DNA of 64,000 nt from Fimbriosthenelais zetlandica (GCA_977030845.1 OZ365116.1:18600001-18664000), one strand, 5' to 3'. Counted from the first letter of the stretch, positions 24-61,650 are shown. The notes: generated by a model from the sequence alone, not told the origin. Made by a program: numbers and translations.

Positions 24-140
24 CGTTAGGACTGTGACCGTTGAATATATTTAGAATGTTCACCATGTATCCAGGTGGACACCGTGCCTCCAGCACTTTG
101 TCCGCGGATGAGAAACATGCACTCAGGGTTATGTCATCTT
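24..140 (-). CDS. G9: N-terminal half of a SUEL domain; gene continues off the left edge
   Basis: ctcatttcag acceptor and G|gtaagc donor flank 117 nt, phase 1 to 1: EDDITLSACFSSADKVLEARCPPGYMVNILNIFNGHSPNG. This matches the family pattern C[FYW]..CxxG..I..xFxG. Confidence 0.8.
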
Positions 141-3100
141 CTGAAATGAGAAAATCATTTAAAATGTAAAAATTTGTGTCAGATCCTGTGTCAGATAGTG
201 GCTCATCTCATGGCTATTTTAATTGTCATGCCCTCTAGTGTATTGAAGTGAAACCCACTCCTCTAACATAATTATGACCTCCCTTTTTAGCTGATATTAT
301 AATTATTTTCTATCCATTTTCCCTCATTTCCCTCCCCATGTCCTGGGGATCGCTATTTGGCCAATTTTTGGTCGAGGGGGAATTCATTACTGGCCCTTCC
401 CCATCCAGGGCAGCTGCTGCATGTTCCCAGGCCAGCAATATCAATATTTCACATCTTTCCCCTCCCTAATGATGATTGTATTCATTTTCTTTTTATTCCA
501 CCTTTGGACTTTCTCAGATAGCCCTTGAGTACATTAGGCAGGCTATGCCGGGGGTAATCCAGAAAAAGATAGATTACAGACCTATATGTTTACTCTATAG
601 ATGACATAGTGCCCTTAGTAGTTGCATAGTAGTCAGTCTTGGGTCCCATTTTACCCATAGAGGATATTAAGTAGCTGTACTTTAGTCTACTATCTGGGTC
701 CCACTATACCCTTGCTTCTATCTAAGCCGTGGGAATTAGGCCTTGTGATGACTTTACGCTACTATTTATCCTGGGAATTATGACAGTTCCTGAGCCGATA
801 ATGGCAAATAGAATGCTGGTGCATGATTAAAAATGCTCGAGGGTTTATATTGGAGTCTCATCTTAGCTCCAGTACAGTTCATTGACAATTTAATTGCTTC
901 ATCGTCAATGTTTCTCTGTTAACGAAATTTCCAACCTGATCTCATTGTGAGGACTGTTAGTCGTGGCTGGCAGTATTCTGAGTTTGTCTGTGAGGTTAGT
1001 TTGGGGGTAATTGGCCATGGCTGAGTGATAGACTATGGCAGGCCTGGCACGTGACATGCACGCGCACCACGCGCCATACAACCACTCTCTGCTCACCACC
1101 AAAACATGGTCTAACCAAAAAATGAGAGTTTGTCAATTGTTAATTCTAACACATATTGTGAAAAGTGTGCCATATTAGTTAATCTGGGTGAAAGTGGGGT
1201 TTGAGTGACACTTGAGTGTTTGTAGAAAGATGAAGTGGGGAATGAAATGATGGATGGTGGGAGGGCTATGACCTGTTTACCTACAGGCCAGGTTTTGGGT
1301 TGTTTGGGGGTTGGGTTTGGCAGATGTTGGGTTCACAGGGCTTTTAATATCCTGCTTCTACCATATACCACCTTCACAGTTTATTATGTGTAAAGGGGTA
1401 TAAGAGGTCATGGGTGAAAAAACCGTATCTATATAAAATTATTAGGGTGTGATCGATTTTTTGATAAATATTGCCTTTCTGTATTAATAAGTGGGAGGCT
1501 ACTCAGTGACCGTAAAATAAGCGGGTGAATTTTTCTCTGAATTATGTTTCGTTCTTACTGCACGGTTTACAGTACATGACATTGGGTAGAGCAGAAGGAA
1601 AGGTGAAACTAGGAAAAGAACATTACACATCCATGTCTAAAAAAGTTTGAAAAAACTGACTTGGCAAATAATGAATGAGTGTGGTTGGATAACGAGCCAA
1701 GATTAGAGAGGAAACCCTGGGACAAAAATAGGCCTTCCCTGGTTTTATCCTGGCTGTGGATTAATGACATCATGTTTAATTGATGCTCATTATTACATAA
1801 TACCGAGGTTTTACATGCCGCCCTCAAATTGTTCCAATGAGAAGACTCTGGTCTCATATTTTAATAAGAAACGTCCAGGAAATGTAGGATTTTGTTAATG
1901 ACCATTCTGTACTCATTAACCTGTATTTTATCAGCGTTTGAGGAGGAAATCAGTTATACCGGGTCTCATTTTAAAACAAAAGCAATTTAGTTTAGCCTGG
2001 GCTGGGAGTGTTATCTGTATAGAGACGCCTTTGTTAGGTCTACTTTATCATGTATGTATACAGTGAGAGTCATTACCACATAGAACATGAAGATGTGAGG
2101 AACTCTAACATGTACCGCCACCCACCCGTGCACTGTGAGCCCTACCCACCATTGACGCCCATGATAAACTGTACCTCGGCATCACACAGGTCTGTTAAGG
2201 GTGGATGCATCTATTATACCATTGTTTACCGTTATGTTACAAGTATCAATCTACTCGCCCCCTCATTGCATGATTCAATGTCATCAGTATTTTTTAGTCT
2301 TTCATCATTTTGTCATATGTCTAGCTAAGACTTTTTAGACTCGCATAGCGTTCCCTCCCATTATGAAACCCTTTCACCAGTTTACATGATGGCTCATCTT
2401 TACAATAATAACCTATACTAAACCCCGCCATAACTCCCCTACTAGTCTGTTATGATGAAAACTCACTTCTCATAACTCATAACCTGTCCAAACACCCTTC
2501 ACCCACTGGCCTGTCTGTTATCATATCAGTTGCCCAAATCGTATTGATTGTGAGCTTTGATCTTAAATGAAAGGAAAAAAGTCTAATCAAGATAAATAGC
2601 ACTTATGTGTAAAATACTCGTTGCAAGCAGTGCATTTTAGTGCAACCAGTGTATTTTCAAATTTTATTGGACATTATGTTTGAGAAGAGGAACAGCCGAG
2701 GGCGTGCCGAGCCTGGGAGACAGCTAAAACCACTTTCTTTACTATAGGCGTCGGTTATAATGCCTATCAATTAGAGCAAATTAATATGTCAACTTAATTC
2801 AACAAAGCTGAATGCTTCCACTCAGCCTCAGGTGCAGCTTTTGTGCTTGTTCTTGATAGGCCAGAGGCTTTGTCTCATGTTACATTATCATGTGTTTAAA
2901 AGTTTTGTTCGCGGCGATTTGATTCTCTCACAGACATGGCACCACAGCATAATGTTATTCTATCTAGTCATGTATTGGAAACCAGGCTCTTGTGCAAGAA
3001 AATACGGTAGTTGTCCTTTATATCTGTCCACGCAGATCAATAAAAAGACCAATATGGCACTGGACCTGGTGCACAGATCAATACACACCTATAGATTGGC

Positions 3101-4611
3101 CGTCCTATTATATATTTACCTGCCTAAAGGACCACTGACAGCACCAGTCACTGTGCTTTCACTGCCAAGGCTGAAACTCAATGCCATCTGTCTTCCAGCA
3201 AATACATATATTTACGACTTTTTTAAAGCTTGAATAGTACCATTCAGAACAGTGCCAGGTATAAATGGTCTCTTTTCTCTCAAAACTTGTGTTCGGGTAT
3301 GTTTTTTTCTGGTTTGACCTCTAGGGCAGGTCTACATATTTAATTCCTTTAGACATTTTTCGGTTCCTCATTGAGTTGGAGATCAGTCAGTGTGGGACTG
3401 AAATTTCACAGCTTTAACTGACTGGTTTAACTGACTGGTTTGTAAGTTGTGAGTTCATACATTGGGCTGTAAATGACTGATTGATTATACATTCATCACT
3501 GATTATATCTACCGACAATGTTTACTGAGACTCCTATAATAAACGTACATATATCCTGGTCTTTGTGAGCATTGAATTCTACATGTAGTAAACTTAGTGA
3601 CTATAGGCAGGCTCGGACATGACTCACTGACTGGTGCGACTGGTGCTCATTAAGATAAGTTACACTTAATACACCTCCTCATACTGCCTTAATAATCACA
3701 CCCACATCCTGTAATGAGTCCATGTCATAATAGATGACACATGTATCATAGATATATGTCACTAATATTGGCTAATTTGTTAGTACTAATAGCTTTGGCT
3801 AAATTATTTTCACAACGAAAGTACTGACTATATTATGTAATGTCTCCTCAGTTTTGCCTCGTTTTTGCATTTGGTAAGAGTTAATGCTTACCCTAGTAAC
3901 ATGTTTCCGTCCAGTCATCATTTCGGCCATTGTACATGTTACTTTACCCCTCTAACCCAACACAAGAGGTCAGAAGGTTCTGGAAATGACCATAGGTGTT
4001 GGTACAACCTTAAAACCTCAACGATCCAACCCCAACTCCCTCACCAAGGATCAGACAGAGAGAACAGCTGAGTGACTGGCCTGTGGAGGAGAGGGAGGGC
4101 CCGTGTAGTGATTAGTAAGGTTTATATGCACTATTTGCTGAGCACCTGAGGGCAGGAGGGCTGGCATTTGAGCTGCTCAGACAGTGGTGCCCCTTGTAAA
4201 ATGCCAGGGGTGAGTTGCTCCTGGCACGATGCTTGGAGCAGGTCTTACATACAGGGTCTTGTCTTGTGGCCCTGAGATTCTAATGGCTCCACGAGTGGCA
4301 GTTCTACCGGATGTAATGTAGAGTTTATATACAGAAACAACCCCCAGGTCTTAGAGATGTGAATGGATCTAAACTCACATCTTCCCTATGTCTACATTCC
4401 ACACCTCTCCTCCCCTTTGTGACATGCTTTATGCTGGAAGCTGCATTTGTCAATCACCTAAAACCCAAGCGTGGGAATCTCAATTCAGAGCCGGTACACT
4501 TTATCAGCTGAAATGTTTCAACCTTGGTGTTTTAGAACTCAGTATTCAGTCAATGCAATGAACTCGCACATAGAAAAAAAGCGCTGAAGTCCTATTGTTG
4601 CATATTCTATT

Positions 4612-4630
4612 GTTGCCCAGGCAACTTCCG
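4612..4630. promoter_or_regulatory. X-box overlapping an ETS core in the putative G9 intron
   Basis: GTTGCCCAGGCAAC at 4612-4625 overlaps ACTTCCG at 4624-4630. Confidence 0.45.
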
Positions 4631-6449
4631 CAGATCTCAAATAACTTCTGACTAAATGATTAATAATTTTGTCACTTGATTGGGACGGGCTTTTATAATT
4701 TGTATTTGGCAGATAGTAAAATCACAGAGCGTGTAGAGAATTTCAATTTACTGACGCGAATACAATGAAATATTCTACTCACTCACACGCGGAAGAGATA
4801 TTTTTTTTTTTAAATAATTACTTTCCCCATTGATGCGTGACATGAATTGTTACCTTACTGTTACCCATTCATCAGATGGCAGGTGGAACCAGCAGTTCTA
4901 CTATCATTCATCTATTTAATATATTTTGGATTATAGATGAAAGGCTATGTTAATATCATCGATGCCAGAAATGATGAGTGTGAAGCATTGGTGGTTCATG
5001 TGAGGTTAACAGTGAATCAATGACCACAGGTAGAGTGAAGGCCTCTCTAACCTACCCCTGATTGTTCTAACACAACTCTACCCGCCCATTCTACATGGAA
5101 CCATGCTGTTTACTCTGCTTCCTTCTACCCAAGCTTTCATCAGCTCTTCCTTTAATCATTTAACCCTTTCTCTGTACACAAACTCTTGCTTAACGTGTAC
5201 TTAACTTGGATTAAAAATATGATTCCCTTTGCCCGTGCTCTAGTGGATTGCCAATGGGGTGGTTGAAGCCTTGGGGTGTATCAAGGATAGACCTCTAGGT
5301 AAGGCTGTTTTTAAGGCCAGCATTACATCACGTTGTGGTATGTATATATCATGGGTTTTTACCCAATCTTACCACTGCTCCAGCCTTCCTCCAGTAGGTG
5401 CAGGTATCTCCACCACTGAGCTAGGCAGGTAGTACTCAGCCGTGTGTTAGAGTACAGATAAGGCAGGTAAAGGTATTACATATATACAGGTTGCTTCTAC
5501 TATAGGAAGCTTACCTTCACCTGGCCACATACTGGAGCTCGCTACTCCCCCATACCCACCATCCAAACCAACGCTTTACTCAACACAAACTTTACAAACC
5601 AAACCAAGCTTATAACCAGCAATGTATGCATAAACAAGTGGTGAACTTTGAGCATTTATACATACCTCAATGACCAATTCCTGGCGGGATAACTTGAGTT
5701 TTACACTCCAGCTAAATGTCAGTAAATAGGGAATACGCACAAGTTCAGGGAATCAAACATTTAAATGCCATCTCAAGATTCATTCCCTCGAGTGACCAGG
5801 GGTAGTCAGTTGTACTCTCTGGATCTTCCCACTTCTTCTCCCGTTTACTGTGCATTTATTTTCCCACAATTTCTTATAGCCCATTTAAATATTCATTGAT
5901 TTAACTTTTTAGAAAATCCAGACAATATTCGTCGAAAAAAGCTGTCGGCACATTTGTATGCGTAGTGCAACTATCAATGTGTGAAGCCTATTGTTATACT
6001 GATGAGATCTGTCCCCACCAAATGTTACATGATCAATGTTTCTCACATTAGTCTGTGCTAAAATAATAATTTAACTATATATCACTTATATAAGATACTA
6101 AAAAAGACAAGTCTATTCTTAATCTACCATTCCGGAACCTTTCAACCAACATTGCTATTTTATGGAACATCTCGCATTATGTGATCCTATTTGGAAGGAT
6201 TTGTTTAAAGTATATACAGGTTTGTAAAAATAATTGTATTGTGCTCCTCCGACCAAGTGTATATTATGGCACGTTAAATAAATTATATTTAATTGGTCCT
6301 CCGCCCAGGCTTCCCAGACCATATGAACCATGCGGTGCACCCGTCTTTGGCACCGATCAATAATTATTTATTGGGTCACAATAATTAATAAATTAAAGCA
6401 GAATTTGTGACAATAGTCTGATGTAACAGTTCTACTGGGCCATGTGTCG

Positions 6450-7377
6450 ACATTACTCTGTTACCCTCAATACACTTACAGATTAGTGTATATCAAATCT
6501 TTTTGAAATGCAAGTTCATTGACTCGCCCACCGAGTTAGACATGTTTTTTGTAATAAGTGGTGCGATCCTCACTGACAGTATTGAGAGTTTTTACTGGTG
6601 AGTTATCGTTTATATAATACATGATAATAGAGAGGAGGCCTGATGGCGGTGAATTATGTATACTATATTATCCAGGCTCAGACACGCCTAGTGTCAATGT
6701 GTTGTTTTATTTGTACCATGTGTCTCCTATACCAGCTGTCCCCCCCCCCCCACCCCCCTCATGACACATGGCACCACAATTATCGTGTATCATCATCTTA
6801 CCATCCATTAATCCCGTACCTCTCATTAATTCCTTATATTACTCAATATATATTCTCACCTCATGTCATTTCACATTAACTCATATAAATACTTGATGAC
6901 TAGATCAGAATAACATTACTCTGTTACCCTCAATACACTTACAGATTAGTGTATATCAAATCTTTTTGAAATGCAAGTTCATTGACTCGCCCACCGAGTT
7001 AGACATGTTTTTTGTAATAAGTGGTGCGATCCTCACTGACAGTATTGAGAGTTTTTACTGGTGAGTTATCGTTTATATAATACATGATAATAGAGAGGAG
7101 GCCTGATGGCGGTGAATTATGTATACTATATTATCCAGGCTCAGACACGCCTAGTGTCAATGTGTTGTTTTATTTGTACCATGTGTCTCCTATACCAGCT
7201 GTCCCCCCCCCCCCCCCACCCCCCTCATGACACATGGCACCACAATTATCGTGTATCATCATCTTACCATCCATTAATCCCGTACCTCTCATTAATTCCT
7301 TATATTACTCAATATATATTCTCACCTCATGTCATTTCACATTAACTCATATAAATACTTGATGACTAGATCTGAAT
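6450..7377 (+). repeat. Near-identical ~463-bp direct tandem duplication
   Basis: Copies at 6450-6912 and 6913-~7377 differ mainly in a poly-C tract (12 vs 15 C) and near the end; the duplicated 78/79-aa ORFs in the track reflect this. Confidence 0.95.
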
Positions 7378-9377
7378 CTCACTATTAAAATGATTTAGCA
7401 TGTAGTCCTACTATCAATATGCCTCGTATCAGTTTTGTGTAAGGTATTGGAGGTAAATATTGTGAATGTAAGCCAGTATAGCAGAGGCAATATTTAGGGA
7501 GACCCCCACGGTGCAAGGAGCAAAAAGAAAGATTAGAAGATCGTTTCAAGCTATTGTAACTTGTGGCCACACTTTACCGCCATACATTGTTTGTGCTCAC
7601 AACTCTGTGAGTACTTCATCCATGGTTTATTTGTGGTTTGAGAGTGGGAAACAATATAGATATGAACAGCTGTATAGTTGTATGCTAACGATCCTATACC
7701 ACTGAGATAAGTGCTGATAACATTCACTCAGATACATTTATGATCTCTTCCTTTGTCTTTGACTAGGTACCGAACAAAGGCACTTGTCTTACTACTTGAA
7801 CTGTTATTGAGGCTTGAATATTTTTATTGCCTCGACCGATGTCAGGTAGATAGCCAATGAACTGTGCGAGTCCCAGGCCTCACTACCTCTTCCCCGTGTT
7901 TCTTCCTATATCTTTTTCCCCCTGTCAACCCCCCTTCCCCTATCCTGTTCTTTTATCTTATCTTATCCCTCACGTAAACTACAACTTACACGTGCCTGTT
8001 ATGAAACAAGAGAAGAAAAAATTGCGTGTAGATGTAGTAGTGTTGGTGGGCTTTTTGAGGCGTGTTTATGTTGCTTCTCGCTTCCATGTCCTGCCGTGGA
8101 TAGCTGTGTGTATTTGGACGGAGGACTATTGTCAATACACCTGAACCCCCGGCCCACGCCCGAGCAGCTCACCGCCGGCGATGAGCGCTCAAACCCCCGA
8201 CAAAAACAGGTTCATTCATCTATCTGATCCCTCTTGTTTTCATCCTTTCTATCTATGTTTGTAGAATAACAGCAAGGGTATCGATCCTAACAATAATAAT
8301 AAAAGTTGTCATAAGGATTCCTAGCTATTACTTTACCACAATGTTCTTTGTCGGATAACCTTCTTCTCCATAAGAGAATGGGTAAATGTGTTGGTACATG
8401 TAATGCCCCCATTAGGCCCTGCTCAATGATGTTTAGCCTAACAACATCCACAATAATATAAATGCATGGGGAAGCAAGTGTTTATGTCTGTGTGTGGCTA
8501 ACCCACTTCACAAACATCCATATTGATAAGTCGTGGTAGCACTTTACTTCCTCTCGCTATATTCGGGGTTCTTGGAACAGTTTTTTTGGATGTGGGATAT
8601 CCCCAGACCTTTGCTTCTATATGTATCAAGGACACTGTGATAGAACAAAACTTGATCTTACATATGACAGCCCCCTCCCTACACCTTGACAATGGGGGTG
8701 AATATACATAATACACACCCATTGGTGATCCATGACCCGCAGGACCAATTACTACAAAAAACTCAGGTGCCTTTATATAGTGTCTTTGAGTACAAGAAAA
8801 AAAGTTTAAGGGGATGAAAAGAAGAGGCAACATTGAGCGATCCATTGATGGGACTTTACAAGTAGAGGTGAATACCCGTGTAGGTAATGTTGACATGTAT
8901 AATGAGGTAAAAGATCACCTTTATACCTCAACCCACTCACCACCAAGTCAACATATCTCTCATCACCTCGCCCACCCTTCCGTCCTTCCTTTTCAAATGT
9001 TTACTTCTTTCTTTTTGGAATTATGTGGGTTCATTGACTGAAGTAAATGGATAGAGTCCTAGCGTCTTTCATTATAGCAATCAATGTATTTGTATTATGA
9101 CTGACTTTGATTGTATACATTTCTATGCTCCCCTCACACTGCTCTATATTCGTCAGGTCTGTGGGGGTAGAATTTGATAAAAGCCGTTAAAGTAATTTAT
9201 ATATCAATATCAGCTGAATACCATCAGGGATGGAAAGGTTATCATTTCTTTCATTACCTCGGTTTGATGTGTTTTTTTGGTCCAGAAAAATTCAGAGCTT
9301 TATTCATAGAAACTACCCCCTTAGGCCTATAGCCAGAGTTAATTTTTCATATATATTTGTTTGTTTTATATACATAC

Positions 9378-9468
9378 CTTTCTCAGGATGCTCCTGCTCC
9401 TCCTTGGCCTGTGTTGTGTGGATGCCAAGTTGTAGTACTAGAACCACCAGAACCACCCTCATCACCAT
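9378..9468 (-). CDS. Signal-peptide exon, probably the first coding exon of G9
   Basis: MVMRVVLVVLVLQLGIHTTQAKEEQEHPEK ends at G|gtatgt, phase 1, like the other family first exons. It joins exon 24-140 in frame (..HPEK-EDDITLSAC). I found no better signal exon between 141 and 9377. Confidence 0.6.
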
Positions 9469-11250
9469 CTCCCCCCATCCCTCATTCCTCCCGCCTGGCA
9501 TTCTCCACCTTCCACAGACCATTGCTTCTACTATAACTGAATTGTACCCCAATAGTAGTAGGCACTGTGTATTGGAGTTGAGGCACAGGAACTGTCAATA
9601 AAAACTTATATGGGTCCAGAGAAAAAAGATCCCGACCCATACAATCTCCACAGGTGAGATATAAAGTCAGTACCCTTCCTCCTACCACCCACCACCCACC
9701 CCAGGGGTTAATCCTTGACACCGAGCCTCAGGTAAATCCAGGTGGCCTTGGATCCCAACCATCCATGCTGCTCTGTGATCTGTTATTACAATGATCTCGC
9801 TGGTGTAGGTGACTAGGTAGATGATATTGTTCTGGTAGGTAAGCAGTTCCAGTCTATTGGTATTTCTGCCTATATGAGCTGAATGTAGAGGTAAGTGAGT
9901 AAGTCAGTGAGTGGTTGCATGTGCATGCGCCAGTAGGATACAAGCGAGTGGCGCCCGCTGACTACAGGCCTGGCTTCTTATACGAGCGTCTGCTCATGGA
10001 CTACTATGATGACTACTCCTCCTAGCCCCCATGCTCCTCAGCGCCACCACTCACTCATTGCTCACATTACTACCATTATCTCTCCACCTTACCCAGTGGT
10101 TGGCACGAGGCTGCCTCCTACATCTGCTGCCATTCATTTATACCACGATAAACCATTGATATTGTATCTCACTGATCATACCTAGTATTGACTTAATGTA
10201 CATGTATCCACAGAAAAAGCATTACATATTCTGTATTATGCTATCAACTGTACTGCTAAATATTGCAGGAAAAAATCATGGTGGAGGGAAGAAGAAATTC
10301 CATGACTTCCCCCCTCAAAAGTGTTTTTCCTTGCAGGGCTTGGCAATTATACAAAAAAACCTAACATTCTGATGCTGCAGGTTTAATTAATAAATTACCA
10401 GCTGCTGACTGACCATCTGCTCATTCTCCATGATGAAGCAGCTGTCCTCAGCTGTTTTCAGATGGCATGGAGCCAGACGCCGGCTCTACCATCGGCTGAG
10501 TCATGTCTTCATTCACCTCTCATTGTTGACTTTTTGATTCATTCATGTATAATGAAGTACTACATCCATGATCTTAATTACCCGTGCCCACCTCCAGACC
10601 ACGAGATGTTTCATTAAACCAGAAAATGAGGCCATGAGTGCCAATTCTTCAGCACAAAATAACTACAATTATTTAATTTTATACTACAGTATTTACTTTA
10701 ACTTAGCGTCAACTTGGAATAATTCCAATTAACTTTATTAATTACAAATCCTTTGAAAGGATTTTCCTCAGATTGGATGGCAGATACGAAGACCCTTTCT
10801 AGAAATCTGAGATCAGAAAGTAGACTCCATGGGGGAATTTAAACTCAAATAAACATGGTTTTCACAGCTGGAGTTGTTTGCCTGTGGGAGTGAGAGGAGG
10901 ATATAAGTTGCATGTAGAGTGAAGTTAGATGGTCTCAGTTGCTATTCTCCAGCCCTCTAATTGATCCATGCCACTGGTGCAGCATTTGTATGTGCGCCAT
11001 TCCCAGCCCAGATCCCTCTCACTCACTGCCCACTCCACCTCCACCAACTAAAAACTTTCATACTAAGTTCATGTTTTCTTTAATATCTTAATTCATCACT
11101 GTAAATTGCTTTAAAATTTGACGACCAAACTTTAAAAGAAAAATATGGAAAGTGCCCCAATAATTCTAAATGAATGTCAGAAATGGGATAAATTAAATCA
11201 ATTCATAGTAAAGAGGATTTGCCTCATCTCATCTATCACTGTCGTTGATA

Positions 11251-11396
11251 TTTGGCGGGAATTTGAAGTTTTGTGGGCATAATAAACATTCTGTCCTCTC
11301 TCACCTGCCTTGCCATGGGCAGCAGACCACTTAGCTGGCCCAACCTTAGACATACAAACCCCCACTCACCCGACCCACACGACAAACCGCGCCAAA
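11251..11396. promoter_or_regulatory. E2F/CHR-like elements
   Basis: TTTGGCGGGAA at 11251-11261 directly followed by TTTGAA at 11262-11267; second E2F-like site TTTGGCGCGG on the minus strand at 11387-11396. Confidence 0.35.
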
Positions 11397-11616
11397 ATAG
11401 AAAATCCCCAGGCATATAATATTATTTCAAATTTAACAGTATCAATTTGTGATTGATTGAAATTATAATTTTGACATTTTATTTCTGAAAGAACTGATTG
11501 AAATATAGTACATGATTTCCATTCATTTTGTGGGTTTCACAGATTCTTTTCTATTAAGATTCTAAGCGTTTACAACTTATTAAAAGTTATCAGTAATGAT
11601 TAGGATGATGACGCTG

Positions 11617-11659
11617 GTGACGTCACTGACACCTGGTCACGTGCCACTCATCACGTGAC
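11617..11659. promoter_or_regulatory. CRE plus two CACGTG E-boxes
   Basis: GTGACGTCAC at 11617-11626, GTCACGTG at 11636-11643, ATCACGTGAC at 11650-11659. Confidence 0.45.
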
Positions 11660-14528: not shown

Positions 14529-14582
14529 AGTTAAATTATCTTCCCCTGAAAAATCTAGTTAAATTATCTTCTCCTGAAAAAT
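14529..14582 (+). repeat. 28-bp unit x2
   Basis: agttaaattatcttc(c/t)cctgaaaaat is repeated at 14529 and 14557. Confidence 0.85.
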
Positions 14583-41200: not shown

Positions 41201-41307
41201 TTTGGTGAGGGATGTGTGCAGTAACTGGATAACTAGAGTGAAGAGACCAAACAATACATTACTTTTTGACTTTCTGAGTGGACTTCATCTGACTTTGCCT
41301 GGCTTAC

Positions 41308-49329: not shown

Positions 49330-51293
49330 CTATGGTTTCAGTAAGGTTAAGATGATGGTGAGGAGGTATATGACTGGACTAATTGATGTCCTGCTCACTG
49401 CTGACCTGTCCTGCTTCTGGCGGGAAACCCCGAAGTTAGTTGGTGGTAATGCGTACGGCCTGTCAGGGTCCGCTGAAAAACATGATATAGTACAGTGTCA
49501 GTAAGTCTTACTGTTAAACTTGGCTGGTTTCAAGAAAACATTTTCATCGTTTTAGCATTCAAATTCACTTTGAAGATAAGAGTTTTGAAAAGTGACCTAC
49601 CTGAGGCAGACCCAGGTGGAATGGCTTTCAGTGCTTCAGATGGCATGGTCTTATAGCAGTCAATCGTCATATCCTTACTACCTGAAAATCAGAAATGGCC
49701 TTAGTTAGAATAGGGGAAATGTATGACAGAACCTGGGTGATATGATTGTTGTTGTGACTCTCATATGGAAGGATATCATGGCATATACACATTAGTATTG
49801 GTCAAGATGTACCATACTCACTCGTGACTCTGATACTGAATCCTCGCAGGTTCTTCACCCCCATACTCTTCATGGAGTGGAAGTGTAGTATAATGTGTGA
49901 TGATCTTGACTGTAGAGACTTTCTACCAGCATCTATATCATGACACACCACTACTCCAGCCCCTTTATACATGGGTGACTCCAACATGAGCCAGTCATCA
50001 CACAGACCATCCTCCATACTCAGCTGAACATCTTCAAATGTCACCGTGATGCTGCCTTCATCTTTACTCATGATTTCACACCGGCAGTCCATGTTGTACG
50101 GGTAGAAGTGAGGGTAGCCGGGAGTCTGCACATAAAGATCTGAGTTGAATAGTGTCTTGTTCAGGCAAATGTTGGCTGCTTTGATTCCTTGCTCTGTAAA
50201 ATAGAAATATCATTGTTTTGGATGAGCTCTAGGGAATCATTTCAGTCTTCAAGTAGTTAAATGCATCATGAAATGTGTAGAGTTTTATAGGAGTTTAGTT
50301 TAGGTCTGATTACTTGCCCATCTTGGTAATGGTAATTGCAGGGGAAGGCTTGGTCTTTGTAGGCGTTTCGTTCTCATTTACAACCGCTACCTCCTTCACC
50401 TTGTTTGCAGATATTGGCTTATATGATGTGGCTGTTCCTAAGAAAAAAAGATTCTTAAGTTATTGTTAGTCAAAAAATGAGATGCTTCTTACCATCGTAG
50501 AATAGCTTCTTAATCTTATGATATTATGAGTAAATCCCAGCATACCCTTGGAGACATTACCTTTGACACAGGTATAGTGGACCTGGAAGTAGGTAGGGGT
50601 TGGTGCATCACAGGATGGCATCTCACCAACCTGCTGTACCAGCTGTACACAGCTGTGCCTCGCCTCACATCGACTCCAGTCATACTGTGATCCCATGTCC
50701 AGCGTACAGTCTCCTTCAGTGTGGAAACAACCATTTGACGGATCTTTTGATATTCCATAGAAGGCACGTTGGACGTGAACTACCTTGCCAATGCCACAGT
50801 AGAGAGTAACAAATGAGATGGTATTGGCTGTGAAACATTGACTCGTTGCTTTGGTTCCTGTAAAGAGAAGAATAAAAGAGGAAGATCAAAAAATGTCTCT
50901 GTGCAATGCCACCAGATGTCAGTCTTGCTCATGCAACAGTTTTTTCAACCTTTTGCTCAAAATTTAGGTTTAGGATTAGATCTATAGAAGGAAATGTGCA
51001 CTGTATACATGAGGGTTCCATCTTGTACTGCAAGCTTTTTACATGGTAGATCCTATTGCAACACAGCAGATTTAAAGACTAACTGTGAATGCACAGATAC
51101 AGAGTTTAATGGCATTAAAATCTTAAGGCACCAGTTGATATCTGGAAGTAATAAGATGTCGTGTTAAGCAGGACCTTGTGGGTGACCTGGCAGAAGTTAC
51201 ATGATCTTTGATCTCACCTGGCTCAAGAAGTTCAGTTGGTGTCACTCCTAATGAAAGAATTCCACAGGCGATGGCTATTAAGAGACGCAGCAT
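49330..51293 (-). CDS. G3: signal peptide + SUEL + CUB-like + GPI-type signal (~322 aa; in-frame upstream ATG at 51359)
   Basis: Exons 51218-51293 (MLRLLIAIACGILSLG..), 50561-50857 (SQCF..AFYG..YDWSRC..YFQVHYTC), 49822-50193 (QTPGYP..DCRCE..LRGFSIRV), 49601-49681 (MTIDC..), 49330-49472 (..DRSAVSRTSISPVIYLLTIILTLLKP*). Total 969 nt, open. Confidence 0.9.
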
Positions 51294-54035: not shown

Positions 54036-56384
54036 TCACAAGTGGTACACTAGGCTGGTTAGAGCGGCTATGCTGGCCATTAGCAGGGTTGCTGAATGCT
54101 GATGTCCGCCATTAGAGTCTAGTTGATTTGCTGAAAATAGTAATTATAAACACATTGCTTAGTACACTTGGAGATTGCCGCTCTGGAGAATGAATTCAGA
54201 ACATAAACTTAGTATCATGCTTTCACTAGAGTCTGGCTATGGGCTACAATGAGATGCTTTGACATTTTTTGAGACTGAGTAAATCTACTTACCGCCATGA
54301 TGCCCTCTCTCGGCTTGAGCATTGTTGAATTTATTGCCAGGCTTGCGCATCCTCTTGCCACCACCAGGCCGTTTCTTGGGTCCGTCCATCTTGTCGCCCT
54401 TCTCAACGGTTTCGTTTAGTTCTGTCGTCATCATGGTGGTCGTCTCCGTGGCCTTGGTGCTGAGGATCTCATCATACTCAGCATCGTCCTTGGTGATCTC
54501 CTTCACCTCAGTGTCTGCTGAAGACATGGACCGGCAGGCTATGCGAACTGATGCCTTAGGTTCAGCTGCAATCAAAAGAAAATTGGATATTTTTAAGGAT
54601 TGAATAATACCTTTTATATGCTATTATTAAGAGATGAGCATGTGTTTTACAAAGGTTTTACATAGGGACCATGGTTGTTGGTTCCGTACCTGTGAATGAC
54701 ATCCAGAAGCCCTTGAGTGACCTTGTGAAGTACTGGAACTTTTGGGTTCTGTTATTGTTACCATCTGAGTGGAACTGTATATCTAGTTGAGGCCCGGTGG
54801 ATGTTATGTTCTTCACCCCGGTCATGATGGCCCCGCAGTGACGATGCTTCTGGTTGTTTTGCCTCAGCATCATCCAGTCTGCACGACATCGACTGAAATA
54901 TTAATTTTTACACCTATATTTCAACTTTCATGTCATTCACAAGGTGGATCACTATTTTAAATTCCATATTCAATGTCTCATAGATTGATATGAAAGTGTA
55001 TTACCTGTTTTTCGTCTCAAGGAGGAGATCAACTAAGCTTAGTACTATTCTTGATTCCCATTGAGTTGACAGCTTACAGATACAGTCCTTGTTGATGGGG
55101 TAGTTATAAGGGTAGTTGGGGCTCATAATGAACCCGTCGTTTACTGTAGTCTCTATGTGCTCACAGATGTTGTAGACCTTTTTCCCTGAAAAGTAAAAGC
55201 ATCGCTTAATATCATCTAATCTCTCAGATGATAATGAATTTTATGAAGACTGAAAATAAAAATGGACTAGAAAAAACTGTTGTATGCACATACTTGGAAC
55301 ACATTGGTACTCCACTTGTAAGTAGTCGGAGAACTTCTTTTTCGTTCCTTGGCAGGTTGGCATATAAGACTGCATGACTGTCCGTGTACAGGACCGGTTA
55401 CCCATACAGGTTGACCAGTCATACACCAGGTTCATACTGTCGTCCATACAGTCTCCTGGACAGTTAGAACAGTTATAAGAGTCCTGTCCTGGACTCAGTT
55501 CACAGTTCATCTCCCACGGCTTCAGATTCGTTTTGGTTTTGATACCATGAAAAGCTCGGTTGATTTTTATCATGTCACCATCTGCACAATCAAACTGCAC
55601 CTTGGGAATCCCCCTGCTCTTGAAACATTGGCTGGCTTTGTGAATTTTGAGATCTGTACAAGAAAAAAATGAGTTTTTATTAATATATTCAGACCAGCTG
55701 TACTTGAGAAACTCATATTAGCAATGCAACTAAAGCACCTGTCAAAATATTATAAATGTTGCCTCCCAGTGATAGTATTCCAGAAGTTCTAGATTTGATC
55801 AGGGGGAGTAATTTGAGGTATTTTAGTGTCATATATTAGTCTGAGGTAGGCATGTATAATTGGCATGATTAGGCTGTCAGATGGACGAGGCTAGGTCAGA
55901 GAGCAGGCCAGCACAAGGTGGTGGTCACTCCCTGCCTACACCGTGGACACCAATCATCTTCTTCATGGCAACAGATGGACACCATTAAACATGGCCACCA
56001 AATATTGCGTGAGAAAAACTGCTTCCCAACATCTTTCCTTGTACTGGGAACATTTGGTCATATCCGCAAATGGTTGCCAAAAAAACTTAGATATAAAATG
56101 TTACATTTGTATTATGCATTGCTTCCGTATTTTGGATGTTTTTTGAAAGTTCAAAAAGCAAATAACATGAATATACTCTGCGAATGTTGTTCACAGTTAT
56201 TCGGAAATATATTGCTAATACATGTAAGAATCTGTTAGCAATTTGTAATGTTGGCTCACCATAGATTTGGTATGAAATATCGATACAAATTTGTAAATTA
56301 AAACTCACCATTAGTGCTGACCACAGTTGCCAGGGCAACCAATAAAGCCACTGTGTAGAGGATGTGTGGCTGAATCCCCTCCAT
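54036..56384 (-). CDS. G2: signal peptide + SUEL + CUB-like + stalk + GPI-type signal (~395 aa)
   Basis: Exons 56309-56384 (MEGIQPHILYTVALLVALATVVSTN), 55294-55653 (SUEL), 55005-55185 and 54690-54892 (CUB, MSPNYP..DCICK..LKGFWMSF), 54293-54565 (ASVRIAC + stalk), 54036-54130 (DSNGGHQHSATLLMASIAALTSLVYHL*). Total 1188 nt, open throughout. Confidence 0.9.
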
Positions 56385-58596: not shown

Positions 58597-61500
58597 TTAG
58601 TGCCCGTACATATCATTTTCCATAATGAAGATCCCACGTTGTTCCTTTCTCCGGGCACCGTGTTTCCTGGCATATAATGGCTCTGTACTTCTGGCTGTGT
58701 CATAGTCAGGCTGACTGAGACTCTGAATACTGCTGCCACCTGACCTCAGATGACCTGCCTCCCCTCTACCCATCCTCATGGACGGATTCCTCGCCAGATT
58801 GATGGTGCTCTTGTGGCGTAAAGGTTTAGGTAGAGGCATGGGTCTCTTGTTTAACTTAGCGGGGAGGGTGTTGGATCTACCAGGTGGAATGTTAGCATAT
58901 GTATGCTCATTGCCTCGTGTGAAACAATCCTCAGACCAGCGTGGGAAACCAGCAAAGACATTATTGTCACCCAGGCCAGCATTGTTCAGGGATTCATTGC
59001 TGCTGAAATGTAATGTAATCTGACTGGTGGACTTTTTCTGATGATGCCTGGTGGCTTTATGCTTGGTGACTGGAGTAGGAACATTAACATATGAATGACC
59101 AGGTAATGAGGGATGTTGATGAGACTTGGCTTGTGATGATGAAGCTACTCTCTGATGATGCTCCAGTGTACCATTGTAATGGGGAGGTACACTGCTGCCT
59201 CCTTGTGTCTGTTTCCCTGTCTTACCACCTCCTCCTCCACCACGGCCTCTCTGACGACTCTGACGCTGTGCTATCAGCACATTAGCATGAACAGAGTAGC
59301 CCAGATCATTCCCCTTCTTCTTCTTCCTCTTACTGTAAAAAAACATGTAAGCATGAGTCGCTATTGGATGTAATAAATGCCTAACTGGAAACTAGTTTGC
59401 AAACATAAGCGTAAAAAAACGAAGTTTTCCTCTATAAATTACATTGGAAGGTCACACTTACCTGCTACTTTTGTGTAGACAAACTGACAAGAAGACAATA
59501 ATCAGAATGACAACCACTCCACCAGCTGCTGCTCCTCCTACGATTATTTCTGTGTGCGAAAAGAGTCATAAATAAATCCAGATTCATGAAATATGAGATG
59601 AAATAACAAAGGAGCTGCCAACGTTAACTCATTTTAGAGTATCTCCTAGACAGAGTAACTGATTGTTCTATGTCATATGATATATCGTATTGATATACCA
59701 TATACTTACTAATGTCTAGTGCCTCCTCCATCACTTCTGGTATGGATGTTGAGGTTTTCACACTTGGAGATGGTGATATAGATGTAGTTGATGTCATTGA
59801 AGTGTTTGTCACATTCCCTCCGAGGGACACAGTAGTTGTACTTTGTGTTTCCTCCTGTGAATCTACATATTTCATTGATGTTGTGGGTGTTGAGCTGGCC
59901 ATTGTTGCTGGTGTAGTGGTTAGCGTCGCTGCTTCAACATCTACAGTTGTTGCTGAAGTTGATGGTGTTGTTGGAGTAGTTGTCTGGGTTGATGTTGGGG
60001 ATGATGCTCTATGGAAAGTACTATTCAATCTGCCGTGACCAAAGTTCTGGCAGCGAACTGTCGCCTTTGAATATTCTCCAGTCTGCAAGGCAACTTGAGG
60101 AGAAAGGACACATTAATATTTAATTATTTTCATAGTATAAAGTTACATGGCCATTGCCAGCATTTAGACGGACACATTTGGTACGAATTTCTCAATAGGA
60201 TTAATCTTAGATTAAACTTTCAAACGGACATCTTGTATTATTAGATGCATACCTTTCCTGCTAATGTAAACATCTTTTTAATCTTTCCCTGAAATTGTCA
60301 CCCCTAGCCTTTTATGGCCATCTCACAATGAATCTATTATGAATCTGATAGAAGTATGTCTCAACCCCGAGCCTTCCAAGTTACCTCAAGCTTTCTTAAG
60401 TATGTTTGTGTTTGTATGAATGCCAACAAAGACCATGGCCCCCATTGGGGACAAAAAGATTATGTTGACATATGTCGGGATGTATTGACATTCATATGGT
60501 GGATCCAAGGCGGCGCTTAGCTCACCGTTACGCCCCAGTGTACAAAGTGACTAAATATATCCCATGCTACCTCCCATACCGGGATTCCCACTTTATCAGG
60601 TTCCTGTTTTAGGACCTTATGAAATAATTTAAGACCTTATGAAATAATTTCGGAATATGAAATTCCCACTTGAGCATATAATATTCCTTATAGATACATA
60701 AAATGTCTTGTTGCTGTATTCGTCCGGAATCCACTTATACTAAGGGAACTAAATCCAGTATTTTTCCGAATTCTGAAAACAATTATGATTAATTTTAAAT
60801 GAATAATTAAAGTCAATACTTACTTTGGATATCTATCCAGTATCTACCTTTGACGTTGAAGTTTTCACTGTAGAAAGTGAGTGGTATATCCTTGAATGGT
60901 TTATCAGCATCAGTTGGCTTCACATCCACCCCTTGGAAGATCATTCCTCGGGATGCGCACACCTTCTCATCGTTTATCATCACGTAGAAGGGGCAGGCAG
61001 CGTTGTTGACGTCATTGTGGGCCATGTCCCGTATGTTGATATTGGCTATACAGTTATATTCCATGCGGACTGAGCAGTGGCACTGGTCGGAATGCTGCCA
61101 TGTTGTGGGGTAACCATTAGACCGTAGTCTCACTATGCTGCTCTCTGTAGCCTCCTCACTAGACGAGCATGGGTCGAGCACAGGGTAGAGGATTCTCATA
61201 TTATCAGAGACTGAAAGGAAACATGTTTTTTGTTTATAAAGTAATTTCTCATTAATATTTTTATTTTTTTTATTTTTTTATTTTTTTTTTTTATAACAAA
61301 AATGACCAATTCCCCATAGTATAAGCTTGTATACTCACTTGGGTGACATACATATTCAATGTGTAGATACATGCTACCATAGAATCCATCACAGTCATTG
61401 AGGGGTTTATTGTTGAGGAAGAAGTTACAGTTGGAGAAGCCGTTACATTTCTTCCTGTAGAGGTCCGTCTGAGCGTCCTCTCCCAGCATGCAGTGTCCAC

Positions 61501-61650
61501 TCCCAAACGTAGGATACTCACAGAAATCATCATCAAAACTTCTGCTGACAGCAGCGAAGGCTTTCACTATTTCCAGCATGTATTCTGCATCATTACAGCT
61601 GATAGTTTTGGATGTTGAGTTGCTGTAACACCAGTTTCTATGCTCAGGGA
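58597..61650 (-). CDS. G1: SUEL + CUB-like + Ser/Thr stalk + TM + long Tyr-motif tail (type I membrane protein; signal exon not located)
   Basis: GT-AG exons with consistent phases: 61339-61650 (SUEL, 8 Cys, WCYSNS...YLHIEYVCHP), 60824-61210 (CUB-like, SNGYP..QCHCS..KGRYWIDIQ), 59710-60093 (ATVRC then Thr/Ser-rich stalk), 59462-59549 (TM IIVGGAAAGGVVVILIIVFLSVCL), 58597-59332 (KRKKKK stop-transfer, tail ending ENDMYGH*). Possible extra 42-nt exon 61856-61897. Confidence 0.85.
60613..60650 (+). repeat. 18-bp repeat with a 20-bp period, x2
   Basis: gaccttatgaaataattt at 60613 and 60633, in a G1 intron. Confidence 0.85.

What the first reader, a model, noticed from the sequence alone, without database searches (positions are those of the whole stretch)
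24..61650. Tandem cluster of at least nine SUEL-CUB cell-surface paralogues: a candidate cell-recognition code
Seen: nine co-oriented genes share a signal-SUEL-CUB-stalk-anchor plan (G8 lacks CUB; G9 is truncated by the window edge) but are very divergent in sequence and have different anchors and tails. Established: SUEL domains occur in latrophilin and EVA-1/EVA1C, and CUB domains in neuropilin, SOL-1 and Neto. Clustered families mixing GPI and TM members (Dpr/DIP, Beat/Side, clustered protocadherins, Hydractinia Alr) act in neural wiring or self/non-self recognition. I do not know a named family with this architecture. Inference: a lineage-expanded family of heterophilic adhesion or recognition receptors.
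Basis: partly seen in the sequence, partly recalled or inferred. Interest (0 to 1): 0.9.

Follow-up and report, generated by a model that had tools for sequence, protein, structure and literature searches.

The report
Ancient SUEL-CUB surface receptor gene cluster
Eight complete genes and one partial gene in a row encode uncharacterised cell-surface proteins built from a lectin-like (SUEL) domain and a CUB domain, and the same genes lie in the same order in a brachiopod and partly in an annelid, so this is an old conserved receptor cluster rather than a recent expansion.

Summary
On the minus strand I rebuilt eight complete open reading frames (G1-G8; 40 introns, all GT..AG). A ninth (G9) is only a 39-residue SUEL fragment at the window edge. 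G1-G7 share the plan SUEL, CUB, stalk, anchor. G8 lacks CUB. G2-G4 end in GPI-type tails. G1 and G5-G8 have one transmembrane helix. No signal-peptide exon was found for G1 or G9.

The "lineage-expanded" reading fails. The paralogues are 14-38% identical to each other but 35-49% identical to single proteins of Lingula anatina and Owenia fusiformis. A tree groups G5, G6, G7 and the GPI members with their own orthologues. Lingula carries G2-, G3/4-, G4-, G5-, G6- and G7-like genes co-oriented in the window's order. Anchor types are conserved.

Both SUEL residues needed for sugar binding in latrophilin are replaced in all eight genes. The calcium-site acidic triad of CUB is intact in G2 and G7. 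G5 ends two residues after a transmembrane helix that is 77% identical across phyla. The G1 tail keeps three YxN motifs.

Best reading: an old spiralian family of protein-binding receptors and co-receptors. No characterised member exists and function is untested. Other notes of this scan report more SUEL-CUB receptor loci elsewhere in this genome.

The parts
58597..61650 (-). G1: SUEL-CUB-Thr-rich stalk-TM-244-aa tail. The 5' end (signal peptide) was not found in the window.
   Evidence: Exons: 61650-61339 (SUEL, Pfam E=5e-4), 61210-60824 (CUB, Pfam E=0.028; family HMM), 60093-59710, 59549-59462 (TM, phase 1 to 2), 59332-58597. The tail is 52% identical to P0181 of a related species, with YNGT, YVNV and Y[AL]N[IL] conserved.
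54036..56384 (-). G2: signal-SUEL-CUB (two exons)-acidic/basic stalk-GPI-type C-terminus, 395 aa
   Evidence: Exons: 56384-56309, 55653-55294, 55185-55005, 54892-54690, 54565-54293, 54130-54036. It is 71% identical to transcript-like P0156 and 49% to Owenia P0024, with no gaps at the junctions. The CUB acidic triad E/D/D is intact.
49330..51293 (-). G3: signal-SUEL-CUB-short stalk-GPI-type C-terminus, 322 aa; the most divergent GPI member
   Evidence: Exons: 51293-51218, 50857-50561, 50193-49822, 49681-49601, 49472-49330. Pfam SUEL E=4e-5, CUB E=6.5e-7. It sits in the GPI clade on a long branch of 1.68. The end of a G3-like CUB lies upstream of the G4 orthologue in a related species.
46078..48158 (-). 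G4: signal-SUEL-CUB-basic stalk-GPI-type C-terminus, 316 aa
   Evidence: Exons: 48158-48095, 47383-47087, 46946-46539, 46367-46269, 46160-46078. Three exons are conserved at DNA level in L006. It is 69% aa-identical to the related species and 41% to Lingula P0015.
41304..44440 (-). G5: signal-SUEL-CUB-acidic stalk-TM, ending RR-stop two residues after the helix, 390 aa
   Evidence: Exons: 44440-44335, 43060-42740, 42588-42235, 42114-41806, 41386-41304. It has the best Pfam scores of the cluster (SUEL 1e-11, CUB 1e-12). The TM helix is 20/26 identical to those of the Lingula and Owenia G5-like genes, which also end RR-stop.
33166..38220 (-). G6: signal-SUEL (two exons)-CUB (two exons)-784-aa basic stalk-TM-41-aa tail, 1108 aa
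   Evidence: Exons: 38220-38163, 38052-37958, 37379-37154, 37026-36857, 36725-36560, 36404-34053, 33791-33726, 33456-33387, 33289-33166. The stalk, micro-exon, TM and tail exons are conserved in L001. Stalk dN/dS is 0.23. It groups with the Lingula 499-aa gene at 99/98 support, and the SUEL is split in both.
27097..30716 (-). G7: signal-SUEL-CUB (two exons)-Pro/Thr stalk-TM-tail, 415 aa; the most conserved member
   Evidence: Exons: 30716-30623, 29013-28714, 28594-28389, 28259-28118, 27980-27735, 27486-27411, 27280-27097. It is 84-91% aa-identical to the related species in SUEL and CUB, 37% to Owenia P0032 and 35% to Lingula P0049 over about 370-390 aa. A juxtamembrane K/R-RH-x-E-x-IS motif is conserved in all three. 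The signal exon and the 3' end after 27204 are the least certain parts.
23336..25219 (-). G8: signal-SUEL (two exons)-short stalk-TM-tail with SLYGPL and YEAM motifs, 280 aa, no CUB
   Evidence: Exons: 25219-25150, 25041-24893, 24763-24619, 24503-24405, 23856-23775, 23633-23336. The family SUEL HMM gives E=2e-7 for the first half and 0.02 for the second. Pfam gives E=0.009 for the second half. No CUB-like ORF lies between. No orthologue was recovered.
24..140 (-). G9: first half of a SUEL domain only; the rest lies beyond the window edge
   Evidence: Phase-1 acceptor at 140, donor at 24. Family HMM E=0.026. Its best local alignment is to the first SUEL half of G8, with RCPPGY against RCPSGY. 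No upstream signal exon was found.
207..23335 (.). 23-kb spacer between G8 and G9 with no family exon
   Evidence: No SUEL or CUB HMM hit on either strand. No Pfam hit in the six longest ORFs. No Rfam family. It holds a 465-bp tandem duplication at 6450-7377 and a 150-bp one at 17133-17424.

Best explanation
Shown:
- The window holds a tandem, co-oriented cluster of eight intact genes plus one partial gene.
- They encode type-I or GPI-type surface proteins whose ectodomain is one SUEL domain followed by one CUB domain. G8 has SUEL only.
- The cluster is old. The GPI group (G2-G4), G5, G6 and G7 each have their own orthologues in a brachiopod and/or an annelid, in the same order and orientation, with the same kind of anchor.
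- The exons tested against a related species are under purifying selection.

Inferred mechanism:
- The SUEL domains are not sugar binders, because the Glu and Lys required for rhamnose/galactose binding are replaced in every member.
- SUEL and a calcium-site CUB together form a protein-binding head. It would work like EVA-1 (a SUEL co-receptor for secreted cues), or like neuropilin, NETO and PCPE (CUB heads that grip basic residues of protein ligands).
- The members then differ in how they couple to the cell.
  - G2-G4 are lipid-anchored binding subunits that need a partner to signal.
  - G5 is a tail-less protein whose conserved helix probably docks to a partner inside the membrane.
  - G7 has a conserved juxtamembrane motif.
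  - G1 and G8 carry phosphotyrosine-type motifs (YxN, YxxM, SxYxxL) that would recruit SH2 adaptors.
- Each paralogue therefore has a fixed, conserved role as a receptor or co-receptor. The set is not a freely diversifying repertoire.
For: - Gene models: eight stop-free ORFs, 40 GT..AG introns, phase-1 domain exons.
- Domains: Pfam; PDB sequence profiles hit RBL lectins and latrophilin for SUEL, and cubilin, neuropilin, MASP and NETO2 for CUB.
- Orthology: G2-P0024 49%, G4-P0015 41%, G5-P0072 40%, G7-P0032 37%, against 14-38% between paralogues.
- Tree support: 99/98 for G6, 94/95 for G5, 98/95 for G7, 99/97 for the GPI clade.
- Synteny: Lingula contig LFEI02000589.1 carries G2-, G3/4-, G4-, G5-, G6- and G7-like genes in the window's order. 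Owenia has G2-like followed by G4-like, and G5-like followed by G7-like, on one chromosome. A related species has G3, G4, then G6 and G7.
- Selection: dS is saturated and dN is 0.04-0.45.
- Anchors: GPI-type tails in P0015, P0024, P0156, P0157, P0148 and P0154; TM in P0032, P0049 and P0072.
- G5 helix: 20/26 identical across phyla, with RR-stop.
- G7 juxtamembrane motif and G1 tail motifs.
- Sugar residues: the position after the first Cys is F/Y/W and the KYL lysine is M/D/T/Q/N/D/S/R. E42D/Q and K120R abolish binding in latrophilin-1 RBL (PMC2430599).
- CUB acidic triad: read from the alignments. Its role in binding ligand lysines is described in PMC6372009.
Against: - There are no transcript, expression, localisation or binding data for any member, so the functional part is inference from domain features.
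- The acidic triad is complete only in G2 and G7. It is partial in G4 and G5 and degenerate in G1, G3 and G6.
- GPI anchoring is not predicted by a dedicated tool.
- A SUEL domain that has lost the canonical residues could still bind a glycan in another way.
- Short tyrosine motifs occur by chance. Only those of G1 were shown to be conserved, and only against one related species.
- The G1 signal peptide is missing and its CUB is barely recognisable by Pfam.
- A head that binds proteins could act in trans (adhesion) as well as in cis.
Confidence: 0.6

Rival explanations
1. The family would be a trans-acting heterophilic adhesion or recognition code, like Dpr/DIP or Beat/Side. Ectodomains of different members on neighbouring cells would bind each other and specify wiring or tissue sorting.
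For: The cluster mixes GPI and TM members with one shared ectodomain plan. The domains look protein-binding rather than sugar-binding. Old, conserved 1:1 orthology also fits Dpr/DIP-type families. Latrophilin uses its SUEL domain for trans-synaptic binding to teneurin (papers listed).
Against: No binding or expression data exist. Six to nine members is a small code. A tail-less G5 with a sequence-conserved helix points to cis partners in the same membrane. So does a conserved juxtamembrane motif in G7. Known CUB-bearing membrane proteins (NETO, neuropilin, SOL-1, LEV-10) act as cis co-receptors; this last point is from established knowledge, not tested here.
Confidence: 0.2
2. Membrane-bound pattern-recognition lectins. 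The SUEL domain would bind microbial rhamnose or galactose glycans, and the CUB domain would recruit complement-like proteases, as in innate immunity of marine invertebrates.
For: The SUEL fold is that of egg and skin rhamnose-binding lectins. CUB domains mediate MASP-MBL and C1r/C1s-C1q assembly. A bivalve SUEL lectin agglutinates bacteria (cited in PMC8878817).
Against: Both residues shown by mutagenesis to be essential for sugar binding are replaced in all eight genes. The pattern of 1:1 orthology, conserved synteny and purifying selection is unlike immune lectin families, which usually expand by lineage. The proteins are membrane-anchored single-domain lectins without multivalency.
Confidence: 0.08
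3. Gamete or egg-coat recognition proteins. SUEL was first found as a sea-urchin egg lectin, and CUB occurs in spermadhesins and the sea-urchin bindin receptor.
For: The only support is domain precedent, from established knowledge. G1, G3 and the G6 stalk evolve faster than the rest.
Against: G2 and G7 are strongly conserved across phyla. dN is far below dS in every exon tested, unlike typical fertilisation proteins. No ZP domain or other egg-coat module is present.
Confidence: 0.05
4. A rapidly diversifying allorecognition or self/non-self locus, like Hydractinia Alr or Botryllus fuhc.
For: It is a tandem cluster of divergent surface paralogues.
Against: The divergence is old, not recent. Orthologues exist across phyla with conserved order. 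No DNA similarity remains between paralogues. Two haplotig-like contigs of a related species carry the same G7 SUEL exon product, P0041.
Confidence: 0.02

Closest known systems
NETO1/NETO2 (and the CUB auxiliary subunits SOL-1 and LEV-10)
   Same: Both are single-pass membrane proteins with a membrane-proximal CUB ectodomain. NETO2 CUB is among the sequence and fold hits (7f56). NCBI's pipeline names the Lingula G7 orthologue "neuropilin and tolloid-like protein 2". Conserved TM and juxtamembrane segments would fit an auxiliary-subunit role.
   Different: NETO has two CUB domains and an LDLa module and no SUEL. Here there is one CUB, one SUEL and no LDLa. NETO has no GPI paralogues and no tandem cluster. 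The automatic name is a misnomer.
EVA-1 / EVA1C
   Same: Both carry SUEL domains on a single-pass protein, with the sugar-binding Glu and Lys substituted (PMC2430599). EVA-1 acts as a co-receptor for a secreted protein cue. EVA1C is the one reviewed protein matched through the SUEL part.
   Different: EVA-1 has two SUEL domains and no CUB. G1-G7 have one SUEL plus CUB. G8 (one SUEL, TM, tail) is the nearest in plan, but orthology was not tested.
Latrophilin (ADGRL) lectin domain
   Same: It is the best solved single-domain relative among receptors (6ske, 2jx9, 8suf). That domain binds a protein (teneurin) rather than a physiological sugar.
   Different: Latrophilins are adhesion GPCRs with olfactomedin, HRM, GAIN and 7TM modules. 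None of these is present here.
Neuropilin, cubilin, MASP/C1r/C1s, PCPE-1 (calcium-binding CUB domains)
   Same: These give the top CUB matches. The acidic triad that holds calcium and grips ligand lysines is kept in G2 and G7 and partly in G4 and G5.
   Different: The domain contexts differ, and none carries SUEL. TM-scores by query are only 0.2-0.25, meaning one shared domain.
CDCP1 and DCBLD2 (CUB-bearing scaffold receptors with tyrosine motifs)
   Same: G1 and G8 combine a CUB and/or lectin-like ectodomain with a non-catalytic tail rich in SH2-type tyrosine motifs. This comparison rests on established knowledge.
   Different: There is no sequence relationship beyond CUB, and the ectodomains differ.
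Rotifer multi-unit SUEL-CUB proteins (Adineta, Rotaria, Didymodactylos, Seison)
   Same: They have the same SUEL-CUB unit, and it is the outgroup in the tree. PMC8878817 mentions SUEL in large membrane-associated bdelloid proteins.
   Different: There the unit is repeated four to eight times within one 1000-2300-aa polypeptide. Here it occurs once per gene in a tandem array.
Clustered recognition families (protocadherins, Hydractinia Alr, Dpr/DIP, Beat/Side)
   Same: They are also tandem or multi-member families of surface proteins, some with mixed GPI and TM anchors.
   Different: They use Ig or cadherin folds. Protocadherins use variable first exons and Alr is hypervariable. Here there are separate complete genes, old 1:1 orthologues and conserved order.

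Membership tests
SUEL / rhamnose-binding lectin domain (PF02140) | Domain fold and cysteine framework recognisable by the family profile | tested here: met
   Pfam E-values of 1e-11 to 6e-4 over profile positions 1-80 in G1-G5 and G7. The window profile hits RBL lectins 5h4s and 2zx0 and latrophilin Lec domains. Only G5 exceeds the gathering score.
SUEL / rhamnose-binding lectin (functional lectin) | Glu directly after the first cysteine and Lys of the KYL motif, both required for rhamnose/galactose binding (PMC2430599) | tested here: not met
   The position after the first Cys is F, Y or W in G1-G8. The Lys position is M, D, T, Q, N, D, S or R. E42D/Q and K120R abolish binding.
CUB domain (PF00431) | Profile match above the curated threshold | tested here: met
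   G2 (29 bits for the first half), G3 30, G4 41.5, G5 48.8 and G7 38.9 bits, against a cut-off of 21.4. G1 scores only 15.2 bits. The G6 CUB is supported by the family HMM.
Calcium-binding CUB subset | Three conserved acidic residues (Glu, Asp, Asp) at the calcium and ligand site (PMC6372009) | tested here: inconclusive
   Read from the alignments to cubilin and neuropilin. The triad is complete in G2 and G7 and their orthologues. Two of three residues are kept in G4 and G5. It is degenerate in G1, G3 and G6.
NETO (neuropilin and tolloid-like) | Two CUB domains followed by an LDLa module and a TM helix | tested here: not met
   Each gene has one CUB, no LDLa and an N-terminal SUEL instead.
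EVA-1 / EVA1C | Two tandem SUEL domains, no CUB, one TM helix | tested here: not met
   G1-G7 have one SUEL plus CUB. G8 has a single SUEL. Orthology of G8 to EVA-1 was not tested.
Latrophilin / adhesion GPCR | GAIN domain and seven transmembrane helices after the lectin domain | tested here: not met
   Each protein has a single hydrophobic helix or a C-terminal GPI-type tail only. No Pfam hit was found in stalks or tails.
CUB-Sushi receptors (CSMD, SEZ6; the SUEL-CUB-sushi loci noted elsewhere in this genome) | Sushi/CCP domain after CUB | tested here: not met
   Pfam finds no Sushi in the stalk exons tested. Only one conserved Cys follows CUB, in a (V/I)x(I/M/V)xC motif.
GPI-anchored proteins (G2-G4) | C-terminal hydrophobic signal preceded by small omega-site residues; release by PI-PLC | not testable with these tools
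   The C-termini are hydrophobic with no downstream basic tail, and the same holds in six orthologues. No GPI predictor or experiment was available.
Lineage-specific or hypervariable recognition clusters | Recent, species-specific duplication or high diversity | tested here: not met
   Orthologues across phyla are closer than the paralogues are to each other. Order is conserved in Lingula. No DNA similarity remains between paralogues.

The most novel reading that the evidence does not exclude
The cluster would be a conserved spiralian receptor system. The lipid-anchored members (G2-G4) would capture ligands and hand them to the transmembrane members encoded next to them: tail-less G5, G6, G7, and the tyrosine-motif signallers G1 and G8. 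The fixed gene order would be kept for over 500 million years because the genes share regulatory elements that set cell-type-specific combinations. That would amount to an unrecognised, non-Ig, non-cadherin cell-recognition or guidance code of annelids, brachiopods and their relatives.
Probability: 0.15. Interest if true: 0.85.

Novelty: new variant of a known kind. Interest (0 to 1): 0.6.

Why it matters
Spiralians (annelids, brachiopods, molluscs and relatives) have very few characterised surface receptors of their own. This is a whole family with a domain pairing, SUEL plus CUB, that no studied protein has.

Its members have kept their identity, their anchor type, in one case even the sequence of the membrane helix, and their order on the chromosome since before annelids and brachiopods split. 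Tandem arrays of surface-receptor paralogues rarely stay collinear that long. This suggests shared regulation or functional interdependence.

The result also corrects misleading automatic names such as "neuropilin and tolloid-like 2" and "cubilin". It gives concrete, small ectodomains of about 220 aa for binding screens.

Tried and rejected
1. Searching with the 819-aa G6 stalk exon found one Logan protein only. The window's own proteins are not in the collection, so annotated models could not be borrowed.

2. A profile search with eight full-length relatives found only nine proteins. The word filter limits reach, so I do not claim that the family is absent from molluscs.

3. Fold search in AlphaFold DB clusters returned many SUEL+CUB models, but no organism names. 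I did not use accession prefixes as evidence of taxon.

4. Five literature searches gave nothing on this family: SUEL with CUB domain, rhamnose-binding lectin with CUB, Gal_Lectin with CUB, and accession and LOC numbers.

5. dN/dS could not be given as a ratio for most exons because dS is saturated.

6. I first gave G5 a spliced 38-aa tail (41232-41115). I rejected it when Lingula and Owenia showed the same RR-stop end.

7. I first used G7 acceptor 28307. I replaced it with 28259 on the basis of conservation.

8. No signal exon was found for G1 or G9, and no G8 orthologue in the loci fetched.

9. I could not pass spliced window proteins to the remote tools because they have no reference. The structure was therefore predicted for the G2 orthologue P0156. 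Model coordinates were not readable, so the proposed extra disulfide (second Cys of the CxC motif to the post-CUB Cys) is untested.

10. Rfam found nothing in the window.
Full report
**What is in the window.** The sequence has about 40% G+C and no N runs. All family exons lie on the minus strand.
- Pfam recognises SUEL_Lectin (PF02140) and CUB (PF00431) in single exons.
- SUEL E-values run from 1e-11 (G5) to 9e-3. They usually cover the whole 80-position profile but stay below the gathering score.
- CUB is above its threshold in G2, G3, G4, G5 and G7 and weak in G1 (E=0.028).
- HMMs built from the window's own exons find SUEL-like ORFs at nine places and CUB-like ORFs in seven genes. They find nothing between 207 and 23335 on either strand.

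**Gene models.** The domain exons are bounded by phase-1 introns, as expected for shuffled extracellular modules. I enumerated acceptors and donors by phase and assembled eight complete reading frames without internal stops.
- The eight models are G1 (634 aa, 5' end missing), G2 395, G3 322, G4 316, G5 390, G6 1108, G7 415 and G8 280 aa.
- All 40 introns are GT..AG and measure 97-1609 nt.
- Signal-peptide exons with phase-1 donors precede G2-G8. None was found for G1 or G9.
- G9 is one 39-residue exon (140-24). It resembles the first SUEL half of G8 (family HMM E=0.026).
- The five transmembrane members share an exon that enters in phase 1 just before the helix. In G1, G6, G7 and G8 it leaves in phase 2. 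In G5 the stop codon follows at once.

**Independent support for the models.**
- blastn against contigs of a related species conserves only my exons, with edges within a few bases of my splice sites. The contigs are from ENA assembly ERZ25767047 (L006-L008) and Logan run ERR14368249 (L001, L009). The comparison corrected the G7 CUB acceptor to 28259. It also added a G6 micro-exon and the G6 tail exon.
- Synonymous sites are saturated between the two species while dN is 0.04-0.45. For the G6 stalk, dN/dS is 0.23. The exons are therefore under purifying selection.
- Two JGI proteins encoded on 1.5-1.8-kb contigs, so probably transcripts, are about 70% identical to G2. They align across all five G2 junctions without gaps.

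**Anchors and tails.**
- G2, G3 and G4 end in a short hydrophobic stretch after small residues, with nothing following. This is the pattern of a GPI signal.
- G1, G5, G6, G7 and G8 have one internal helix.
- G5 stops two residues after the helix (RR, TAA at 41306-41304).
- G1 has a 244-aa tail. Its orthologue P0181 in the related species is 52% identical. It keeps YNGT, YVNV, Y[AL]N[IL] and a proline-rich RPMPLPKP stretch. YxN is the Grb2-SH2 consensus; this is established knowledge and was not tested here.

**The family is old, not lineage-expanded.** The paralogues share only 14-38% identity over SUEL+CUB and no DNA similarity.
- A profile of six window SUEL exons, searched against 1.84 billion representatives, gave 1248 hits. 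Among the best 150, the single-domain hits covering the family-specific N-terminal motif (ASQCF) are SUEL-CUB proteins of 283-409 aa.
- These proteins come from Lingula anatina and Owenia fusiformis. All are unnamed, except one auto-named "neuropilin and tolloid-like protein 2".
- blastp shows that cross-phylum pairs are closer than the window's paralogues are to each other. G2-P0024 is 49%, G4-P0015 41%, G5-P0072 40%, and G7-P0032/P0049 37% and 35% over nearly full length.
- A maximum-likelihood tree of 33 SUEL+CUB cores gave these groups:

| Group | Support (bootstrap/SH-aLRT) |
|---|---|
| G6 + Lingula c5 | 99/98 |
| G5 + Lingula c4 + Owenia P0072 | 94/95 |
| G7 + related species + P0060 + Owenia P0032 + Lingula P0049 | 98/95 |
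| GPI clade (12 rows): G2 with Owenia P0024; G4 and G3 with Lingula c2 and c3 | 99/97 |

- G1 sits on a very long branch at the base. Rotifer multi-unit proteins are the outgroup.

**Conserved order.**
- On Lingula contig LFEI02000589.1, tblastn with my models finds six co-oriented genes. Their order is G2-like, G3/4-like, G4/2-like (P0015), G5-like, G6-like and G7-like (P0049). This is the order of the window. The G6-like gene is 499 aa with its SUEL split into two exons, as in G6.
- Upstream, Lingula has three further SUEL-SUEL-CUB units and one lone SUEL.
- In Owenia, a G2-like gene is followed by a G4-like gene at 21.77 Mb. A G5-like gene is followed by a G7-like gene at 12.55-12.69 Mb of the same chromosome. 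The cluster is split in two there.
- The related species has G3, G4, then the G6 TM exon and G7 on one 2.25-Mb contig.

**Anchor types follow orthology.** GPI-type ends occur in six relatives of G2-G4. TM plus tail occurs in the G7 orthologues, and TM in the G5 orthologue.
- The G5 helix is 20/26 identical to both the Lingula and the Owenia helices, against about 40% for the ectodomain. All three genes end RR-stop.
- The G7 orthologues share a juxtamembrane motif, K/R-RH-x-E-x-IS.

**What the domains say about mechanism.**
- In mouse latrophilin-1 RBL, rhamnose is held by Glu42 (the residue after the first Cys), Tyr63, Gly117 and Lys120. E42D, E42Q and K120R abolish binding. The authors argue that receptor-borne RBL domains bind non-carbohydrate ligands (PMC2430599).
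- In G1-G8 the residue after the first Cys is F, Y or W. The lysine position is M, D, T, Q, N, D, S or R. Canonical sugar binding is therefore unlikely in every member.
- The CUB profile aligns best with cubilin CUB5-8, neuropilin, MASP, C1r/C1s, PCPE-1 and NETO2. In that subset, three acidic residues hold calcium and bind ligand lysines (PMC6372009).
- Reading those columns, the triad is complete in G2 and G7 and their orthologues. It is two of three in G4 and G5, and degenerate in G1, G3 and G6.
- Cysteine counts in the ectodomains are even: 8 in SUEL, 5 in CUB and 1 just after CUB. The family-specific CxC motif in CUB probably pairs with the post-CUB Cys. I could not check this because model coordinates are not readable.
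- An AlphaFold2 model of P0156 (the G2 orthologue) is confident for both domains (mean pLDDT 72, pTM 0.63).
- Fold searches hit solved or reviewed proteins through one domain only, with TM by query of 0.20-0.25. AlphaFold DB clusters hold many unnamed SUEL+CUB models.

**Interpretation.** The shown facts are a conserved, collinear cluster of SUEL-CUB surface proteins with fixed anchor types. I infer a protein-binding head of non-lectin SUEL plus CUB, coupled to the cell in different ways.
- G2-G4 would couple through a lipid anchor.
- G5 would couple through a tail-less conserved helix, suggesting contact with a partner inside the membrane.
- G7 has a conserved juxtamembrane motif.
- G1 and G8 have tyrosine-motif tails.
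- This works like EVA-1, neuropilin or NETO co-receptors and like CDCP1-type scaffolds. It is a member of none of them, because the defining domain sets are not met.
- A trans adhesion code remains possible, at about 0.2.
- Immune lectin, gamete recognition and allorecognition readings are disfavoured. The evidence against them is the lost sugar residues, the 1:1 orthology and the purifying selection.

**Novelty.** I found no paper on this family. A review of rotifer lectins states that the role of SUEL lectins in lophotrochozoans is elusive. It mentions SUEL only in large membrane proteins of bdelloids (PMC8878817). The proteins exist in databases as uncharacterised or misnamed entries. The architecture and the conserved cluster appear undescribed. 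Earlier notes of this scan report further SUEL-CUB(-sushi)-TM loci elsewhere in this genome. I did not examine those.

Noticed in passing
window 41304-41386; L002 about 19721; L003 about 12996: G5 and its Lingula and Owenia orthologues all end RR-stop directly after a transmembrane helix that is 20-22 of 26 residues identical across phyla. This is far more conserved than the ectodomain (about 40%).
   Followed up: yes
window 58597-59332; L009: The G1 cytoplasmic exon keeps three YxN motifs, a proline-rich RPMPLPKP stretch and the C-terminal ENDMYG in a related species, at 52% identity overall.
   Followed up: partly
window 34053-36404; L001 467-2931: The 2352-nt G6 stalk exon (basic, Lys/Arg/Pro/Thr-rich, no Pfam hit) is conserved at 44-50% aa identity with dN/dS 0.23. 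It is constrained despite its low complexity. The Lingula G6-like protein is only 499 aa, so the long stalk is a later addition.
   Followed up: partly
window 6450-7377: A 465-bp unit is duplicated in tandem at 99% identity (6450-6911 and 6913-7377) inside the gene-free spacer. This could be a recent duplication or an assembly artefact. A 150-bp tandem pair lies at 17133-17424.
   Followed up: no
window 207-23335: A 23-kb stretch between G8 and G9 has no family exon, no Pfam hit in its longest ORFs and no Rfam match. This contrasts with the 3-6-kb spacing of G1-G8.
   Followed up: partly
L010 11154-17207 and 21326-21610 (Lingula LFEI02000589.1): Upstream of the Lingula G2-like gene lie three SUEL-SUEL-CUB units and one lone SUEL. 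RefSeq XP_013419491.2 (816 aa, two units) looks like two neighbouring genes fused. MetaClust P0155 (697 aa) likewise joins two genes.
   Followed up: partly
P0049 (XP_013419485.1); P0006 and P0177 (Rotaria): Automatic names are misleading. The Lingula G7 orthologue is called "neuropilin and tolloid-like protein 2" and rotifer SUEL-CUB repeat proteins are called "Cubilin". Neither has the defining domains.
   Followed up: yes
P0003, P0006, P0010, P0030, P0097: Rotifers (Didymodactylos, Rotaria, Seison, Adineta) carry the SUEL-CUB unit repeated four to eight times within single proteins of 960-2300 aa. One is encoded on a 5.2-kb transcript-like contig, so these are not merely fused gene models.
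   Followed up: partly
L007 5508-7238 compared with L008: One of two haplotig-like contigs of the related species carries a 576-aa reverse-transcriptase (RVT_1) ORF about 3 kb upstream of the G7 orthologue. The other contig lacks it.
   Followed up: no
window, first residues after each CUB exon (for example 42114, 46367, 54565, 36404, 27980, 60093): Every member has a (V/I)x(I/M/V)xC motif with one Cys right after CUB, and CUB has an extra Cys in a CxC motif. This is probably a family-specific disulfide, or the remnant of the sushi-like module reported at other loci of this genome.
   Followed up: no
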